64,000 nt of DNA from Leidyana gryllorum EB-2025a (GCA_048772705.1 JBLWGC010000109.1:124001-188000), one strand, 5' to 3'. Positions 56,610 through 63,803 are shown, counted from the stretch's first letter. Translations and numbers: made by a program. The notes: generated from the letters alone by a model not told the origin.

Positions 56610-57085
56610 TCACAAACCCTTATCTATACGGCAGAGGGCATAGAGCTCAGCTCCACTCATCTCACTCAAGGGCTTTAACAGGTTGTTGTCATCCCCCTCT
56701 TCTTCAGACTCGTCGTCGGAACTCTCGGCGCTGTCCTTGTCAACCTTGCCAGCGATATCCAATGATCGCTCTGCAGCTATACGGTTGAACGAGTCCTCCC
56801 ACCAGGGTTGCCACTCATGCGCTTTGGCCTTGTCTGCTCCGAGCTGCACACAGTCGAAAGAGAGGGATATATAAAACGGGTTGGTACACGGCTCACCCCA
56901 AGATTCTCTGCTCTGCGTCTAATTTGCACTGGCTCCAATATGCCGTCATTGTTCTTCCCGAGTCCTTCGCCTTCTTGCCATCCGAACTTCTTCAAAAAAG
57001 CAGCACCAAAGCTGGACGATACCTCCTTCGACGAGGTTCCAGACAGTGAGAGCAGGGCCTCCTCATACTTCTTCCGACCCCCCAT
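56610..57085 (-). CDS. G-patch domain protein (GPATCH4/PinX1-like), 2 exons
   Basis: SFGAAFLKKFGWQEGEGLGKNNDGILEP..LG spliced to LGAD..WWEDSFN. Confidence 0.85.
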
Positions 57086-57095
57086 GGCAAAAAAA

Positions 57096-58699
57096 ATGGC
57101 CACTGTGGCTGCTCCCCCGGCCGACCAAGATAAGCTGCGCCCCTTGAAGAGAAAAGCAGAGGGCCCTTTGTTTCAGTCCAAGCGTATTCGACTGGCCGCC
57201 TCACCACTCCACCTTCAACCGCCATTACGTGTGCGCATCACCCACTTTCCTCCCGTCATAATGCAACCTCCCCTCGAGCACCAAGCCGTTCTGGCTCCTC
57301 CCACCCCCCGTGTAACCAACAATGCGCTTGATGGCGCCTTAGTAGTCCAATCCTTGCGGTCACAGCCCTTTGATCCTCAACGGGTCCGTAATGACCTCCA
57401 AGCCTACCGAGCGGAGGTCGGTCGTCGAGGGGTGCGTCTAGTCTACCTTTCTTTCTCCCCTCACACTCTGCAAACAGACCTCCTGGCGGGCTATCGCGCA
57501 CCCTATACGTAGTTTGTATGAGAATTTGAAAGTCTCCATAACGGAAGTGCTCCGATACAACCGTTCCACTGCTCCTCCTCCCCGTGTAAGTTCTTTTCCT
57601 CCCGAGATATCACACCAGACCCACTCCGCAGCCCGAATGGATCGCGGCAGCTGAGAGTTCCCGCTTCGTTGAAGTCACACCTGAAGAAGCGGCAAAGGTA
57701 GAGTATCTGCTAGAAACCGTTGACGACGACCCGTGCACAATCGTTGCTGAGGTCGATGGCATCACCCTCACCAAGTAAGACAAGTTGTGGTGGGCAACTC
57801 GCTCGACAACAAGCCCTGCAGACGCGATATGCGGTGCCTGCGGAGCGGCGAATGGCTGAATGACGAAGTAATAAATAGTTATATGAATCTCTTGAATGCG
57901 CGAAGCCGCCGAATGCATGAGCAGCGCAATCTGCCACTCGCATATCATTGGTCTACCTTCTTCTATTCCTCACTGACTGCTGAAGACAGCTATGGACAAC
58001 GGGAGTACACCTACAATCGTGTTCGAAGATGGACCACACGCAAGAAGGTTGATTTATTCTCAATGGATCTCGTCTTTATGCCGATCCATATCAACAAAAT
58101 ACATTGGGCACTGGGATGTATAGATCTTCGGTAAGCTTTGTCTTCCGGCCGATCCCGGACATCGCATGATGCAGGAGCAAGCTGATCTTCTTCTTTGACT
58201 CACTCGGAGGGATGGCGGAACGGGATTTTTTCGACACATTGCTGAGATACTTGGACGATGAACATCAGGATAAGAAGGGTAAGCCACCGTCATATGCGCG
58301 GAGACACAACTCATCGTATACACACACACGAACACACACACACACACTTACTTAGGTTCCCCTCTACCTGACAAGGATAAGTGGATGTTCGCGGGTAACA
58401 ACTTTGCGTTATCGGTATTTCTGCCTCGTTACAAGTTTGACATGTTGACGGGGCCTGATGCAATGCGAGACAACTCGACGTTGGTTGTGGAGGTTCCGTT
58501 CCAGGACAACGGGTCCGATTGCGGGGTTTTCGCGTGTCAATATGCGGAGAGCCTGGGGCTGTTGAGGTTCCCGTTTGAGTTCAGTTCGGAAGAGATTGGG
58601 ACGCGAAGGCACAAAATGGTGGGTGGCACTAGAAAGGTTGTGGTTAACTACTAGCATGTTCAGGCACTGCAAATTATCAGAGGGTGCATTGATTCCTGA
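57096..58699 (+). CDS. ULP1: Ulp1/SENP SUMO protease (C48), multi-exon
   Basis: WLNDEVINSYM, STFFY, VRRWT, PIHINKIHW, FDS, QDNGSDCGVF (His-Asp-Cys triad). Confidence 0.93.
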
Positions 58700-58701
58700 G
58701 G

Positions 58702-60887
58702 TCAGTTGTCTTTGTGGTGGGCGAGCTCCTCTGTGATGGTGGGCGCATCTAGACCAGCTGCGAGACCAGCTGCAAGTTGCGCTTCCTGTTTGGCTGCTTC
58801 TTTCCGTGCACGAGCAGTACTGACATCTATCAAGTATGCCTGGCATCGCTTGATGCAGATGCGGAACTGTATCATCAACTGCTGTTTGGGTATTCCGAGC
58901 TCTTTTGCCACGACAGCGGCTGCAAGCGAAGATTGAGAGAAAGGAATGGCGGGGAACAACAAGACCTACGTGATTTCTGCTGCAGACCAATGCCGACGAG
59001 TGCCGCTTGTTGGAACAATTCTAAGTGGAGCGGGGGGACTCCTTCGGCGTCCTCGCTCGGAGGCAGTCTCTGACAGAGGCCTTGGGTGAAAAGGAGTCCC
59101 AAGAGTGGCCAAATGTCTCCCACGAGGGAACCTTCCATGCTAATCTGTAGATGCCGCTCCAGTCTCTCTAGATCAAAGGCATCGAAGAACACTCGGAGCT
59201 GCGATGAGGATAACAATTGACAATTGATCAAAGATTCCATCGGCAACGTACCCTGCGTGCATTGAGGCCCCCATTGTCAGGCAGCAGTTTCCCAGCGAGC
59301 GCGGCAAAGTGAACACTGATCACCGCAGCCAGCCGGGAGTCGATATTCCGATACGTACCCCCCAGGATGATGGGCCAGGAGCTGACCATAGCGTGCTGAA
59401 TCTCTTTCACCCATTCGACGCAATCTTTCTTGGTGAAAACTCTCATATATTGCGCAACAAATTCATGGAGGAGCGGATCCACCCAACGCTCACATTTCAC
59501 CAGACTGAAACCCAAACTGATCCAGAAACTGAATGATCTGTGCGACAACCCTTCATTCACAGTCACAACCTCTGCGCCCTTCTTGCACTCGAGGTACTCT
59601 GCATTATCCAGCAGAGGCGCCAGACCGGTCGGATCCGCCCATCTCAACTCCTTTTCGACGCCCTTAACGGGACCCTTCCTCCCAACATACTCCAGCCACA
59701 GCTGCACGCACCTCTTGCCGTACCCTTTTTTCTCAATCTCCGGGTGCACAGCCATGTGAGTAATCTCAGCCACCGTCCCCATCACCGCCGGGTCGTACTC
59801 GTCAGGCGCTCTGCCTTTGTATTTGCTCACAAGAGCCGCCAGCGGCTGTGGCTTTTCCTCCTTGACATCCGTCCGTGAACAGAGGACGAATACATCGTAG
59901 TTCTCAGAGTCTTTCAACACCCCCATAAACTCCTCCTCAGTCACCACTGGCCGCGCTCTCGCGACAATTGACCCTATTTTGGCCAATAACGCCTCCGACT
60001 TGTCGCTTCCCGATAACAGAGTCGTGGTGTTGACTTTGTACAAGATACAAGCCCTGGGCGGGGGGACCTGCTCGCGGTTCTCAATAAACCAGGGCGAAGC
60101 CACATCCACCCGCAGCGACTGTTTGGGATCCTCCCCAACATACTCGTCAAACTTCACTTCACTGAAAAGCGGATAGGCACTGTTGTGTGTGTGTTCATTG
60201 CGCGTGACTTCCTCCAGCTGGTCGAACAGCTCGTATTGCCGGTAGATGGACGGTGATCCGGGGCCTCCAGTAGACGCGGCCACAACGGTCATATAGTTAC
60301 CTGAGCGATAATGGATGAAAAGGCATTTTGCAGCCGCCCTTACCGAGCATTGTAACGACCATATTTGGGGGTAATAGAGTGGCTTCATCCACGAGTAGCA
60401 GGTCAGGTCTCACAAGTCTTTGAATTTCAGAGGGGAATACATACTGAATTGTTTGACGGTGTCTCGCGATCTTTCCCCTCCCCATTGTCAACCGAATGGG
60501 AACAAAATCCACAATGTTATCAATGGTCTGTTCGATCACATCATCAGCCTTGTGCCTCTGATGACTACTGTCGATCTTGTCGATTATGTAATCTGCGCCC
60601 TCGTGATACCCCATGGCAGCTAAGCCGTGTTGCGCCCATTCGAACACCTCGGCAACCATCCCGGGCTCGCGGGCGGTGACGAAAACATTGCGCATGTCCA
60701 CTTCCAAACCATAGGCAGCGGCCAGTCCCAGAGCAGCACTCTTGCCAGTCGAACGGGGACCACTTATCCCGACGACTCCCCCAGGAATGCGAGTGCTAAT
60801 CAAAGTCCTCAGAAGTCCCAAGGCAGCTTCCTGGTAGGACGAGAGTGGTGGGAGATCCAGGCCATATGACGACCCCCGAGGGACCAT
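58702..60887 (-). CDS. Divergent N-terminally truncated NAT10/Kre33 paralogue (copy B; multi-exon)
   Basis: GPRSTGKSAALGL, VFVTA, QTIQYVFP, LLLVDEA, GNAT motif HMAVHPEIEKKGYGKR, C-terminal FDLERLE..GLQQKS..AKELGIP; introns including 60343-60301. Confidence 0.85.
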
Positions 60888-60930
60888 TGTGACTGTTTTT
60901 TTTGAGCGGTTGTTAATTCAGAGAACTGTT

Positions 60931-63803
60931 CTACTCAAGTTTTGCTAAAGCTTTCCTGAACCTTTTCGCTAATGCTACCGCCTCGTTCGATTCTACGCGT
61001 TGTCTTTTTGCTATTCGCACTGCCGTCAGCAGCTCGCCCTCTGAGGGAACTACTTTTGCCACCTGCCCCCGCAGGTACAGCAGGCACAACAAATACAACA
61101 CCTCATCCTCTCTCCCAACTGCCAAGTCTGTCCCCTCTGCTAAACGCTGCAGTCTCTTCAAACCCACTTTCGTCAACACGTGGTCTCTCTGAAGAGGGGA
61201 GAAAACAAAAATACTCAGCCAATAAAGACACCACGACTTACCGTATCGGCATCCATACTCCAATCCAGATCTCTGATCTTCCGGCTTTTCAGCACTCTCT
61301 TCCGCAAAGTCAGAAACTCCTTCACCAACGGCGTCACCGCGTCATCCGACAGCTCCTGCAGCGCTGACCCGAGCCACACAACGAACCGCCGACCGAAATT
61401 CACCACAAATGGACTGACCCAATCCTCGTTGCCGCCCGTCGGATCCCGTAGCTGTCCCAAATATATGGCACTCCAACGTCCAGTCACAGTGTCTCGGTGC
61501 AGATCGACCCAAACCGGCATCATCCCGCCCTTCTTCATCAACTTGATGTTGGCATTCGTCAAGTCCCCCGTCCCAGCGACCCAATCCAAGTTGAACGCCG
61601 GAAACGTTTGATTGGTGTCCTCCAACAGGGGGGGTATCTCTGTCGGAGCTTTCACCACCTCTGTCAATATAGACTTGTCCTCGACTTCATTTCCATTTCC
61701 ATTTCCGCTGCCCGCCTCCTCTTCGTCAGCTGTTGTGGCTCTCTCTGCTTCTTCTTCCTCCTCCTCAGTAGCCGCTGGGGCAGTCTCCGCTTTCTCTTCG
61801 GCTGGTAACTCCTTGCGGAGGTGTTCCAAGAGATCCTGCAGAGCTTTGGTGGCGAAGCCTCTCCGCAAGAGATCTTTGTGGGTCGCCAGTTTGAGGATCC
61901 GGGCGCCGGTGAGCTTTGTGAAATCGCTCTCACAAAAGTAGTTCGCCACAGTGTACGGGACGAGATCGGAGTTCTTGGTGGGGCTCGGGTCGTAATTGAC
62001 GCCGCCTTCGTAGGCCACTTCGATCGCACAAATTATATCCGGAACTGTCGCGGTGGAGGAGTCCAGCTGGGGACAAAGGACGAACAGCTCCACTTGGGGC
62101 GAATCAGACAATCTCAGGAGGTCGTCTGGAGAGTTCTTGTGGTGGGTGGAGGCAAAGAGAGTGACAATCTTTTTGAGAATCAGCTCGCCGGAGGGGTGGA
62201 ATGCGAAGAGAGCGTCTCGATTCAGCCGATACAAACAGGCCGTCTCCGGTTTGTACCAAGAGGGGTCCTGAGTCAGCTTGAGACACTTCTCTCCCCACAG
62301 GTCCAGACACAACAGTCGGTTAAGCCACGCTTCAATGGGGTCCTTCTTCCCGTACCGAATGGGTGCTGTTAGTTTGACAGTGGATTGTAGATTCTGCTCC
62401 CCCAAGACTTGCTTTGTCAATGCGTAACCGGTGCCTTCGTACCCATCAACAGTGGACGCCATCAACGTGAGGTAGGGACCCAAAAGTGCTCTCAGTGTCT
62501 CAGTCGGGATAGCAGCGGCTTCGTCGACCAGGAGAATGTCGGCACTGCCAACTTTGTCAACGGCGGTGGGGAAGACGTATTGCACATTTTGAGTGTAATG
62601 GACTGACTTGTTCTTCGTAATTCGGATCTCTGTGACGATGGAACGGCTTTTTAGACTCTCAACGATATTCTCCTGAGTCTCATTTTCGGCAGTTGGGAGT
62701 GTCGAGAAGACGAGAAAGTCTTGATGCTCCTCGTAGCCCAAAGCTTTCAGACCTCTGACGGCAAAGTCGAAAACTGCTGTGACATTGTCTGGAGAGGGTG
62801 CCGTGACGAATATGTGTTTGACTTGGTGAACAACCGCCAAGGCCACCGCCAAACCCAAAGCAGCTGACTTCCCTCTCCCGCGAGCTGCTGTGACGGCTAT
62901 CCTCCCCTCATTGACTGCACCACCTTCTCTGAATTGCTCAGCGAAAGCCGCAATGCATTTTGCCTGGTCTAAAGTGCGACACAACTTGACTAGTGGGCCC
63001 ACATGGGCATTATTGTCAAAACGGGCCTTCAACTCCACCAGCTGAGGGTCTTCAGGCTCCGTCTTGGTGCAACCAGCTGACAAGAGCGCTCCGTCAGGCA
63101 ACGCTGGAATCGCCTTGAGCTGTTGCATGCTCAGCGGCAGTACATTCAACTCGTCGTCCAGCACTAAACAGTTGGAACATTGGGTCAAACTCAATATCAG
63201 ACGTTGACAAAAGCGAGGTTTGATCCTCTCGTCAAAGAGCGAAGATCGAAACTCCTGATGTGCGTCCAACGCGAGATTGTATAGTTGGCGCAACGACGCC
63301 TGTGTCCGTAATAACAGACATATTAGCCCACCACCCCGCACCGTTTCGAACGTTCGGCATATCAAATTGGGGGTCAAGGCTTCAAAGTCTTGGATGACCG
63401 CCATGTCATACGTGTTTCCCAGCAATTGTTCAGAGTCACGGAACTTGCAATACCTAACGCTTGTACCCTGTTGGAATAACCAGAATGGATCCTCGGTCTC
63501 ATTGTCATATGCCCCCATAGCCTGACGCTTCTTAATCTGCTTCAGACGCTTAGCGCGGTGCGTAGTGAACCCTGAGGAACCAAATCAGAACACAGCCGCA
63601 CAGACAGACGACTCACCCAAGTCATCCTTATAACACCATACGACTGACGGCTTGCCTGGCCTCAACCTCGCTCGGGTTGCGTGCAGATTTACAACTTGAT
63701 CCCTTCCTCTGTCACCCACGATTACCAACAAGGCTCGATGGTTCTGGACCACTGCATCCCACAGAAGAGCCCCAACTCGGTCATCAACGCGCTTCCGAAC
63801 CAT
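60931..63803 (-). CDS. NAT10: RNA cytidine acetyltransferase NAT10/Kre33 (copy A; multi-exon)
   Basis: MVRKRVDDRV, QDFEALTPN..TFETVRGGG, TAARGRGKSAALGL, VDEAAAIP, ASTVDGYEGTG, PIRY...DPIEAWL, STHHKNSPDDL; stop TAG at 60933-60931. Confidence 0.93.

What the first reader, a model, noticed from the sequence alone, without database searches (positions are those of the whole stretch)
58702..63803. Tandem NAT10/Kre33 paralogues with complementary motif losses: candidate split, heterodimeric ac4C writer
Seen: two NAT10-like genes lie head-to-tail, 43 bp apart. Copy A keeps the N-terminal domain, full helicase motifs (GRGKS, DEAAAIP, GYEGTG) and the S-H-x-K-N motif. Its acetyl-CoA motif has drifted (KLATHKDLLRRGFATK vs canonical RIAxHPxxxxxGYGxR) and its C-terminal tRNA-binding region is short and eroded. 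Copy B lacks the N-terminal domain, has GYEGTG changed to GGPGSP and SHYKN changed to ARPVV, but keeps a near-canonical HP-x5-GYGKR and a recognisable C-terminal domain (GLQQKS..AKELGIP.QQL). Known: NAT10/Kre33 is usually single-copy and acts as a dimer. Inference: the homodimer has subfunctionalised into an A/B heterodimer, B is a pseudo-enzyme partner, or the two copies split tRNA and rRNA substrates.
Basis: partly seen in the sequence, partly recalled or inferred. Interest (0 to 1): 0.82.

Follow-up and report, generated by a model that had tools for sequence, protein, structure and literature searches.

The report
Tandem NAT10 pair: head and tail

Summary
Copy A (924 aa, 3 exons, 63803-60931) and copy B (679 aa, 4 exons, 60887-58702) lie head-to-tail on the minus strand, 43 nt apart. 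All five introns are clean 43-53 nt GT..CAG introns.

- **Copy A:** a NAT10/Kre33 orthologue (E 1e-154 to NAT10s; 465 bits to human NAT10).
- **Copy B:** a very divergent NAT10 homologue (profile-profile 99.8%, E 1e-28). It lacks the N-terminal domain and the catalytic His-Tyr.
- **Conservation:** the pair and its flanking genes recur in an independent assembly of a distant relative (A-A 39% identity). Conservation is mirror-image: A keeps N-terminus plus helicase (47%) and loses the tail, while B keeps the tail (45-50%) and lets helicase and GNAT drift (23-25%). In solved NAT10 dimers the RNA-binding tail serves the partner's active site, so an A:B heterodimer is coherent.
a third full-length paralogue (C, another contig) is the only copy with the canonical His-Tyr. 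A has His-His, and published Tyr mutants are inactive. The relative's A has lost both the His and the acetyl-CoA loop.

My best reading is an asymmetric A:B dimer doing the non-catalytic ribosome-assembly job, with C as the likely ac4C writer. No RNA data and no binding test were available.

The parts
63617..63803 (-). Copy A exon 1 (ATG 63803-63801; MVRKRVDD...WCYKDDL), the start of the NAT10 N-terminal domain.
   Evidence: Read and frame-checked. Collinear with the N-terminus of the relative's A in L008.
61242..63571 (-). Copy A exon 2: rest of the TmcA_N/DUF1726 domain, the helicase (GRGKS, DEAAAIP, GYEGTG), the GNAT domain (THHKN, RRGFATK) and the first helices of the tail.
   Evidence: Pfam. 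E 1.9e-154 to NAT10s. 465 bits to human NAT10 (PDB 9j3c). Motifs.
60931..61188 (-). Copy A exon 3: short, eroded RNA-binding tail (LLTAVRIAKRQ in place of LLGxGLQxK), with stop TAG at 60933-60931.
   Evidence: No Pfam hit. Alignment to canonical tails. Only an 18-aa local match to the relative's A tail.
60888..60930 (-). 43-nt spacer between A's stop and B's ATG. A and B are in different frames, and a TAA lies five codons after A's stop.
   Evidence: Equally tight spacing is seen elsewhere in this genome: 47 nt between B's stop and the convergent Ulp1 ORF, and 27 nt upstream of C.
60344..60887 (-). Copy B exon 1: N-terminal half of the helicase domain (GPRSTGKS, LLLVDEA). There is no TmcA_N domain.
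   Evidence: Pfam helicase 2.5e-16. 34% identical to A.
59252..60300 (-). Copy B exon 2: degenerate second half of the helicase (GGPGSP), a GNAT domain without the catalytic His-Tyr (ARARPVV) but with the acetyl-CoA loop HPEIEKKGYGKR, and the start of the tail.
   Evidence: HHalign of the B profile against the NAT10 profile gives 99.8%.
58970..59198 (-). Copy B exon 3: core of the RNA-binding tail (FDLERLERHL...ALVGIGLQQKS).
   Evidence: tRNA_bind_2 2.4e-6. 50% identical to the relative's B. Its intron lies at the same alignment column and phase as A's intron 2.
58702..58919 (-). Copy B exon 4: end of the tail (AKELGIPKQQLMIQFRICIKR...), with the stop at 58704-58702.
   Evidence: tRNA_bind_2 7e-4. 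45% identical to the relative's B.
57787..58654 (+). Convergent Ulp1/Peptidase_C48 gene (two ORF pieces), used as a synteny anchor.
   Evidence: Pfam. Same position and orientation in L009.
56777..57103 (-). G-patch gene, used as a synteny anchor.
   Evidence: Pfam. Same position and orientation in L009.

Best explanation
A and B are the two products of an old tandem duplication of the NAT10/Kre33 gene and have divided the parent protein between them.

- **A** keeps the N-terminal domain, the ATPase/helicase and the GNAT fold. These form the 'head', the part needed for the essential ribosome-assembly role.
- **B** has lost the N-terminal domain and the catalytic residues. It keeps a near-canonical RNA-binding/dimerisation tail and an acetyl-CoA-type loop.
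- **Proposed mechanism:** they replace the usual Kre33/NAT10 homodimer with an asymmetric A:B dimer. B's tail serves A's side in trans, as the partner's tail does in solved NAT10 dimers. The dimer works mainly as the non-catalytic small-subunit processome factor.
- **Copy C:** acetylation of RNA, if it occurs in this organism, is more probably done by the third paralogue C on contig C33, the only copy with the canonical catalytic His-Tyr.

**Shown:** gene structures, homology, conservation of the pair, mirror-image domain conservation, motif states, and the existence of C.

**Inferred:** physical A-B pairing, loss of catalysis in A/B, and C as the writer.
For: - **Intact genes:** both are multi-exon genes with clean introns.
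- **Homology:** B is collinear with NAT10 from Walker A to the tail (HHalign 99.8%, E 1.2e-28).
- **Origin by DNA-level duplication of an A-type gene:**
  - A's and B's second introns lie at the same alignment column and in the same phase.
  - B's helicase exon is 34% identical to A, and B shows no match to C.
- **Conserved pair:** it recurs with the same flanking genes in a relative whose A is only 39% identical.
- **Domain identities, window versus relative:**
  - A: N-terminus plus helicase 47%, GNAT 31%, tail almost unalignable.
  - B: helicase 25%, GNAT 23%, tail 50% and 45%.
- **Published structures (PMC13433802):**
  - NAT10 is a head-to-head, tail-to-tail dimer; the tails bury about 1000 A^2.
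  - The RNA-binding domain around each active site comes from the other subunit.
- **Acetylation is dispensable for growth:** yeast H545A abolishes acetylation without a growth defect, whereas a Walker A mutant impairs growth and pre-rRNA processing (PMC6770127).
- **Catalytic His-Tyr is near-universal:** it is essential (H548Q and Y549F are both inactive) and present in 327 of 339 family members.
- **States of the dyad here:** A = HH, the relative's A = NY, two further A-type relatives = SH, B = RP, C = HY.
- **Copy C:** it is full length, with a tRNA_bind_2 hit of 3e-15.
Against: - There is no direct evidence that A and B bind each other.
- A's tail is eroded exactly at the LLGxGLQ helix, which is conserved in B, in C and across eukaryotes. 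If that helix forms the tail-tail interface, canonical A:B pairing would be weakened, and B:B or B:C pairing becomes possible.
- The relative's A keeps more of its tail (LLGSCLQGKS), so tail loss in A is not an ancestral feature of the pair.
- B in this genome keeps all six helicase residues flagged in a human mutational scan (R, K, S, D, E, T). The relative's B has lost them, so B's conserved role cannot be ATPase activity.
- C has a deviant acetyl-CoA loop (TGKRLG) and evolves very fast (28-30% identity to NAT10s, very long stem). Its activity is not assured.
- C was found only in this genome and one close relative.
- His-His in A has never been tested and could be active.
- No expression data are available.
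Confidence: 0.4

Rival explanations
1. One reading: A:B is a catalytically active, split ac4C writer with one composite active site (A's helicase and GNAT plus B's tail in trans). C then handles a different substrate class.
For: - The structural logic is the same as for the best explanation.
- A keeps a His at the catalytic position and a GxA acetyl-CoA loop that fits the GNAT consensus.
- A has intact Walker A/B and GYEGTG motifs.
- B keeps a near-canonical GYG loop in both species.
- Patch 3, on the partner's GNAT surface, contributes to activity in trans.
Against: - The catalytic Tyr is replaced in A, and even Y549F abolishes activity in CtNAT10.
- None of the four A-type relatives has HY, and the syntenic relative's A lacks both the His and the acetyl-CoA loop. 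The function the pair conserves is therefore unlikely to be acetylation.
- No THUMP-domain adaptor was found in the genome.
Confidence: 0.2
2. B does not pair with A. It acts as a B:B homodimer, as a partner of C, or as a free RNA-binding or acetyl-CoA-binding pseudoenzyme, perhaps standing in for a missing adaptor. The adjacency only reflects its origin by tandem duplication.
For: - B and C both keep the LLGxGLQ tail helix that A has lost.
- Tight head-to-tail spacing is common in this genome, so adjacency alone is not evidence of partnership.
- No THUMP-domain protein was detected.
Against: - Adjacency has been kept over a very deep divergence.
- The mirror-image conservation of A's head and B's tail is most simply explained by the two working as one unit.
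- C-type genes were not seen in the relative that has B, although its assembly is incomplete.
Confidence: 0.2
3. One chimeric mRNA: A's exon-2 donor (61241) is spliced to B's exon-3 acceptor (59199). This would give a single protein with A's head and B's canonical tail. A's own exon 3 and B's exons 1-2 would then be alternative or vestigial.
For: - The two introns lie at homologous positions and are both phase 0, so the junction 61242->59198 is in frame.
- The product would restore a canonical full-length NAT10.
Against: - It needs a roughly 2-kb intron in a genome whose introns here are 43-53 nt.
- B's exons 1-2 are long intact ORFs, conserved as a 615-aa ORF in the relative.
- There is no RNA evidence either way.
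Confidence: 0.05
4. B is a decaying pseudogene or an artefact of assembly or ORF reading.
For: B's helicase and GNAT regions evolve very fast, and Pfam's NAT10-specific GNAT model scores below its cut-off.
Against: - B has four exons with no stops and three frame-preserving GT..CAG introns.
- An intact orthologue sits at the same syntenic place in an independent assembly of a distant relative.
- The tail is 45-50% identical across that distance.
Confidence: 0.03

Closest known systems
NAT10/Kre33 homodimer (human, yeast, Chaetomium thermophilum; PDB 9j3c, 7mq8, 5jpq, 9aym/9b0i)
   Same: - A has the same domain order and scores 437-465 bits against these chains.
- B is collinear from the helicase to the tail.
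- The proposed A:B dimer reuses the published head-to-head, tail-to-tail geometry, with the tail acting in trans.
   Different: - Known NAT10s are single genes forming symmetric homodimers with His-Tyr in both protomers.
- Here there are three paralogues. A has His-His and an eroded tail.
- B has no N-terminal domain and no catalytic dyad.
E. coli TmcA (PDB 2zpa)
   Same: Shared helicase + GNAT + tail architecture (A matches it at 9.5e-11).
   Different: - TmcA is an L-shaped monomer whose own tail serves its own active site.
- It has no partner and no ribosome-assembly role.
RNA-modification heterodimers made of a catalytic subunit and a degenerate paralogue (METTL3-METTL14, ADAT2-ADAT3/Tad2-Tad3, Trm61-Trm6); cited from general knowledge, not tested here
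   Same: Both start from a duplicated enzyme. One copy keeps the catalytic equipment, and the other loses catalysis but supplies RNA binding or scaffolding.
   Different: - No such partner has been described for NAT10.
- Here the 'catalytic' partner A also lacks the canonical Tyr, and a third paralogue exists.
- Binding between A and B is not shown.
Other His-Tyr-less NAT10-like proteins (spiders Argiope and Uloborus, a mite, Perkinsela, a dinoflagellate transcriptome)
   Same: NAT10-family proteins that keep a GYG-type acetyl-CoA loop but lack the catalytic dyad.
   Different: - They are near full length (737-969 aa).
- They are not specifically related to B: they score E 1e-9 to 1e-13 against the B profile, like ordinary NAT10s.
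- Their genomic context was not examined.

Membership tests
NAT10/Kre33/TmcA family - copy A | N-terminal TmcA_N/DUF1726 domain | tested here: met
   PF08351 2.2e-31. Exon 1 supplies the start of the domain.
NAT10/Kre33/TmcA family - copy A | Helicase domain with Walker A (GRGKS), Walker B (DEAA) and GYEGTG | tested here: met
   PF05127 4.8e-46. Motifs intact.
NAT10/Kre33/TmcA family - copy A | GNAT_acetyltr_2 domain with a Q/RxxGxG/A acetyl-CoA loop | tested here: met
   PF13718 1.8e-40. The loop is LRRGFA: the G and A positions are kept and the first position has drifted. xxxGxA variants occur in other members.
NAT10/Kre33/TmcA family - copy A | Catalytic His-Tyr dyad (CtH548/Y549 = human H537/Y538) | tested here: not met
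   A has His-His. Y549F and Y549A are inactive in CtNAT10. HY is present in 327 of 339 members.
NAT10/Kre33/TmcA family - copy A | C-terminal helical RNA-binding domain (tRNA_bind_2) with the LLGxGLQ helix | tested here: inconclusive
   No Pfam hit. Alignment shows homologous helices, but the motif is eroded to LLTAVRIAKRQ and the domain is shortened.
NAT10/Kre33/TmcA family - copy B | N-terminal TmcA_N/DUF1726 domain | tested here: not met
   B starts 36 residues before Walker A and only 43 nt after A's stop, so there is no room for the domain and no Pfam hit.
NAT10/Kre33/TmcA family - copy B | Helicase domain with Walker A/B and GYEGTG | tested here: inconclusive
   - PF05127 2.5e-16, but covering only profile positions 2-110.
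- Walker A/B are kept and GYEGTG has become GGPGSP.
- The relative's B has lost Walker B.
NAT10/Kre33/TmcA family - copy B | GNAT domain homologous to NAT10's, with an acetyl-CoA loop | tested here: met
   PF13718 scores only 3e-4, below the cut-off. HHalign to the NAT10 profile is 99.8% and collinear through the GNAT domain. The loop is EKKGYG here and RARGYG in the relative.
NAT10/Kre33/TmcA family - copy B | Catalytic His-Tyr dyad | tested here: not met
   Arg-Pro at the aligned positions. The relative's B has no equivalent.
NAT10/Kre33/TmcA family - copy B | C-terminal RNA-binding domain | tested here: met
   tRNA_bind_2 2.4e-6 and 7e-4 on exons 3 and 4. GIGLQQKS and ELGIPKQQL are present. 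45-50% identical to the relative's B.
Heterodimeric enzyme plus pseudoenzyme-partner RNA modifiers | The two paralogues physically form a stable complex | not testable with these tools
   - Full-length spliced A (924 aa) plus B (679 aa) exceed the complex predictor's size limit, and spliced models could not be submitted.
- The main interface (the tails) is split across exons.
Heterodimeric enzyme plus pseudoenzyme-partner RNA modifiers | Both genes are expressed as separate products | not testable with these tools
   No RNA run was listed for this locus.

The most novel reading that the evidence does not exclude
This lineage has naturally taken NAT10 apart.

- The obligate Kre33/NAT10 homodimer of the small-subunit processome has become an A:B heterodimer in which one gene supplies the head and the other the RNA-binding tail.
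- The acetyltransferase chemistry has moved to a separate, fast-evolving paralogue (C).

That would be the first heterodimeric NAT10 and a natural separation-of-function of its assembly and acetylation roles.
Probability: 0.3. Interest if true: 0.75.

Novelty: new variant of a known kind. Interest (0 to 1): 0.6.

Why it matters
NAT10 is described as the sole eukaryotic ac4C writer. How its essential ribosome-assembly role relates to its dispensable catalytic role is an open question, currently studied with point mutants.

A lineage where evolution has split the protein would be a natural separation-of-function system:
- A keeps the head.
- B keeps the tail.
- C keeps the catalytic dyad.

It would also test directly the structural claim that the tail acts on the partner's active site.

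It shows too that NAT10 can follow the same route as METTL3/METTL14 or ADAT2/ADAT3, from a homodimer to an enzyme with a pseudoenzyme partner.

The practical caveat is that the organism is poorly sampled. Everything beyond sequence conservation is inference.

Tried and rejected
- **RNA evidence:** The look-up of sequencing runs listed no RNA run. Transcription, transcript ends and junctions remain untested.
- **Word search with B exon 2:** blank.
- **Exhaustive profile search with the B alignment:** only the relative's B (P0238, 3e-180) scored above ordinary NAT10s at about 1e-19. No wider B family could be assembled and no dN/dS was possible.
- **MAFFT alignments A1 and A2:** these scattered the exon-2 fragment and were discarded in favour of A3.
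- **Tree including B:** the careful search did not finish in two 300-s runs. The quick tree gives B branches of about 10 substitutions per site, so B's placement is not trusted.
- **Tree without B:** it supports the A clade (100/100) and the C clade (100/100) but not their positions. The apparent affinity of C to Perkinsus dissolved in the careful tree.
- **Fusion by read-through:** rejected, because A and B are in different frames and a TAA follows five codons after A's stop.
- **Complex prediction:** not run, for these reasons:
  - A plus B exceed 1000 residues.
  - The main (tail) interface is split over exons that may not be joined.
  - A single job cannot compare AB with AA and BB.
  - Any NAT10 paralogue pair might dock in the memorised homodimer mode.
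- **Spliced (joined) protein models:** not submitted to any search or fold. Exons were always used separately by reference.
- **THUMP-domain search of the genome:** no candidate even at E<=10. This is weak negative evidence only.
- **Organism identity:** could not be established.


Full report
**1. What is there**

The minus strand of 58702-63803 holds two complete genes.

- Copy A has three exons (63803-63617, 63571-61242, 61188-60931) and 924 codons.
- Copy B has four exons (60887-60344, 60300-59252, 59198-58970, 58919-58702) and 679 codons.
- No exon contains a stop.
- The five introns are 43-53 nt, all GT..CAG, and each restores the frame.
- A's TAG and B's ATG are separated by exactly 43 nt. 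The two genes are in different frames, and a TAA follows five codons after A's stop, so read-through fusion is excluded.
- Such spacing is normal for this genome:
  - B's stop lies 47 nt from the end of the convergent Ulp1 ORF.
  - The third paralogue starts 27 nt from a divergent gene.
  - Other readers noted gaps of 0-10 nt in this same window.
- Adjacency alone is therefore weak evidence for co-expression.

**2. Family assignment**

- A matches TmcA_N (2e-31), the NAT10/TmcA helicase (5e-46) and GNAT_acetyltr_2 (2e-40).
- A is 35-42% identical to NAT10s from all eukaryotic supergroups, down to E 1.9e-154.
- A scores 465 bits against solved human NAT10 and 437 bits against Chaetomium Kre33.
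- B is far more diverged:
  - helicase 2.5e-16, covering only the first 110 profile positions;
  - NAT10-type GNAT 3e-4, below Pfam's cut-off;
  - tRNA_bind_2 at 2e-6 and 7e-4 on the last two exons.
- A profile of B and its one orthologue aligns collinearly with a profile of twelve canonical NAT10s over 426 columns, from Walker A to the start of the tail (HHalign 99.8%, E 1.2e-28).
- B is therefore a true NAT10-family protein without the N-terminal domain.
- Spliced, joined protein models were never submitted to a search or fold. Each exon was used on its own by reference.

**3. A third paralogue**

Six-frame scans of the whole 15.5-Mb assembly find exactly three loci with NAT10 domains: A, B, and a gene on contig C33, here called C.

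- C is full length:
  - a very diverged N-terminal exon followed by an 856-aa exon;
  - helicase 3e-40, GNAT 6e-41, tRNA_bind_2 3e-15.
- It is only 25% identical to A and 28-30% identical to NAT10s generally.
- It has one 70% orthologue, in a Logan assembly.

**4. Conservation of the pair**

- A Logan contig from another organism (L009) carries, in the same order and orientation, an A-type gene, a B-type gene, a Ulp1 peptidase on the opposite strand and a G-patch gene.
  - The B-type gene is a 615-aa main exon plus two tail exons.
  - The gap from A's stop to B's ATG there is about 10 nt.
- The A proteins are only 39% identical, so the arrangement is old. It is not an assembly artefact.
- Two further A-type relatives (L008, L011) show no B within about 4 kb downstream, and their A keeps a GIGLQ-type tail.
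- An exhaustive profile search of 1.84 billion representatives found no other B-type protein.
- A careful tree unites the four A-type proteins (100/100) and the two C-type proteins (100/100). Neither clade can be placed reliably. B's branches are saturated.
- B's origin from an A-type gene is supported by three things:
  - adjacency;
  - 34% identity to A in the helicase exon, with no detectable similarity to C;
  - A's intron 2 and B's intron 2 share the same alignment column and the same phase.

**5. Mirror-image conservation**

Identity between this window and the relative, by region:

| Region | Copy A | Copy B |
|---|---|---|
| N-terminus plus helicase (A) / helicase (B) | 47% | 25% |
| GNAT | 31% | 23% |
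| First tail helices | 35% | 30% |
| Rest of the tail | an 18-residue local match only | 50% (exon 3), 45% (exon 4) |

Selection therefore holds A's head and B's tail and lets the other halves go. This is the strongest new support for a division of labour.

**6. Motifs against the literature**

CtNAT10 H548 and Y549 (yeast H545, human H537/Y538) are essential: H548Q and Y549F both abolish activity. They are conserved in eukaryotes, bacteria and archaea (PMC13433802).

The states here:

| Protein | Catalytic dyad | Acetyl-CoA loop (QxxGxG/A) |
|---|---|---|
| A | His-His | LRRGFA |
| L009's A | Asn-Tyr | lost |
| A-type in L008 | Ser-His | RNRGFA |
| A-type in L011 | Ser-His | RRQGYG |
| B | Arg-Pro | EKKGYG |
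| L009's B | none | RARGYG |
| C and its orthologue | His-Tyr | TGKRLG |

- Walker A/B and GYEGTG are intact in A and C.
- B keeps Walker A/B here, but L009's B has lost Walker B.
- No copy has the full canonical set. C is the only one with the catalytic dyad.
- In the relative, neither A nor B looks able to acetylate.

**7. How it most likely works**

- Solved NAT10 is a head-to-head, tail-to-tail dimer:
  - the helicase contact buries about 400 A^2 and the tail contact about 1000 A^2;
  - the RNA-binding domain surrounding each active site comes from the other subunit;
  - a basic patch on the partner's GNAT domain also matters for activity.
- In the 90S particle the homodimer is used asymmetrically.
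- Yeast H545A abolishes acetylation without a growth defect, whereas a Walker A mutant impairs growth and pre-rRNA processing (PMC6770127).
- A duplicated homodimer of this kind is predisposed to become a heterodimer in which one subunit keeps the head and the other the tail.
- I therefore read A:B as an asymmetric replacement of the Kre33 dimer. Its conserved job is ribosome assembly rather than acetylation. C is the probable writer. Confidence is 0.4.
- The rivals are:
  - an active split writer (0.2);
  - B acting without A, as B:B, as B:C or as a free adaptor-like protein (0.2). This gains weight from the fact that A has lost the LLGxGLQ helix that B and C keep;
  - a chimeric splice from A's exon 2 to B's exon 3, which is frame-compatible by descent (0.05);
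  - a pseudogene or artefact (0.03).

**8. Limits**

- No RNA run was listed.
- No binding test was feasible.
- The organism is unidentified and its relatives are known only from short contigs.
- No THUMP-domain adaptor was found in the genome. This is a weak hint that tRNA acetylation may be absent.

**9. Novelty**

- NAT10 paralogues with a degenerate partner have not, to my knowledge, been described.
- The pattern is a new variant of the known 'enzyme plus pseudoenzyme paralogue' theme.
- The scan had noted the C gene's 27-nt upstream gap before, on another piece of this genome. It had not linked C to this pair.

Noticed in passing
G000 contig C33, about 249.1-252.0 kb (L002:629-3561; L006:136-2706): Third, full-length and very fast-evolving NAT10 paralogue (C).
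- It has the canonical His-Tyr dyad, intact helicase motifs and a canonical tail.
- Its acetyl-CoA loop is deviant (TGKRLG).
- It has a 70% orthologue in Logan sample ERR10900103.
   Followed up: partly
Proteins P0294, P0313, P0281, P0338, P0376 (hits): NAT10-like proteins lacking the catalytic His-Tyr also occur in other lineages.
- They come from spiders (Argiope, Uloborus), a mite, Perkinsela and a dinoflagellate transcriptome.
- Several keep a GYG acetyl-CoA loop.
- They may be independent NAT10 pseudoenzymes.
   Followed up: no
Whole assembly G000: No THUMP-domain (PF02926) candidate at any threshold in a six-frame scan. THUMPD1/Tan1, the adaptor needed for tRNA ac4C12, may be missing. 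The evidence is weak because the domain is short and the genes have introns.
   Followed up: partly
window 61189-61241 and 59199-59251: A's intron 2 and B's intron 2 lie at the same alignment column and are both phase 0 and 53 nt long. This is a retained ancestral intron, and it would allow an in-frame A-exon-2 to B-exon-3 splice.
   Followed up: partly
L009:8447-8462: In the syntenic relative, A's stop and B's ATG are only about 10 nt apart, even tighter than the 43 nt here. This suggests operon-like or overlapping transcription units in this group of organisms.
   Followed up: no
window 56777-58654: A Ulp1/Peptidase_C48 gene (plus strand, split by an intron) and a G-patch gene (minus strand) flank the pair. 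They are syntenic with L009. B's stop and the Ulp1 ORF end are 47 nt apart, so the 3' ends must nearly touch.
   Followed up: partly
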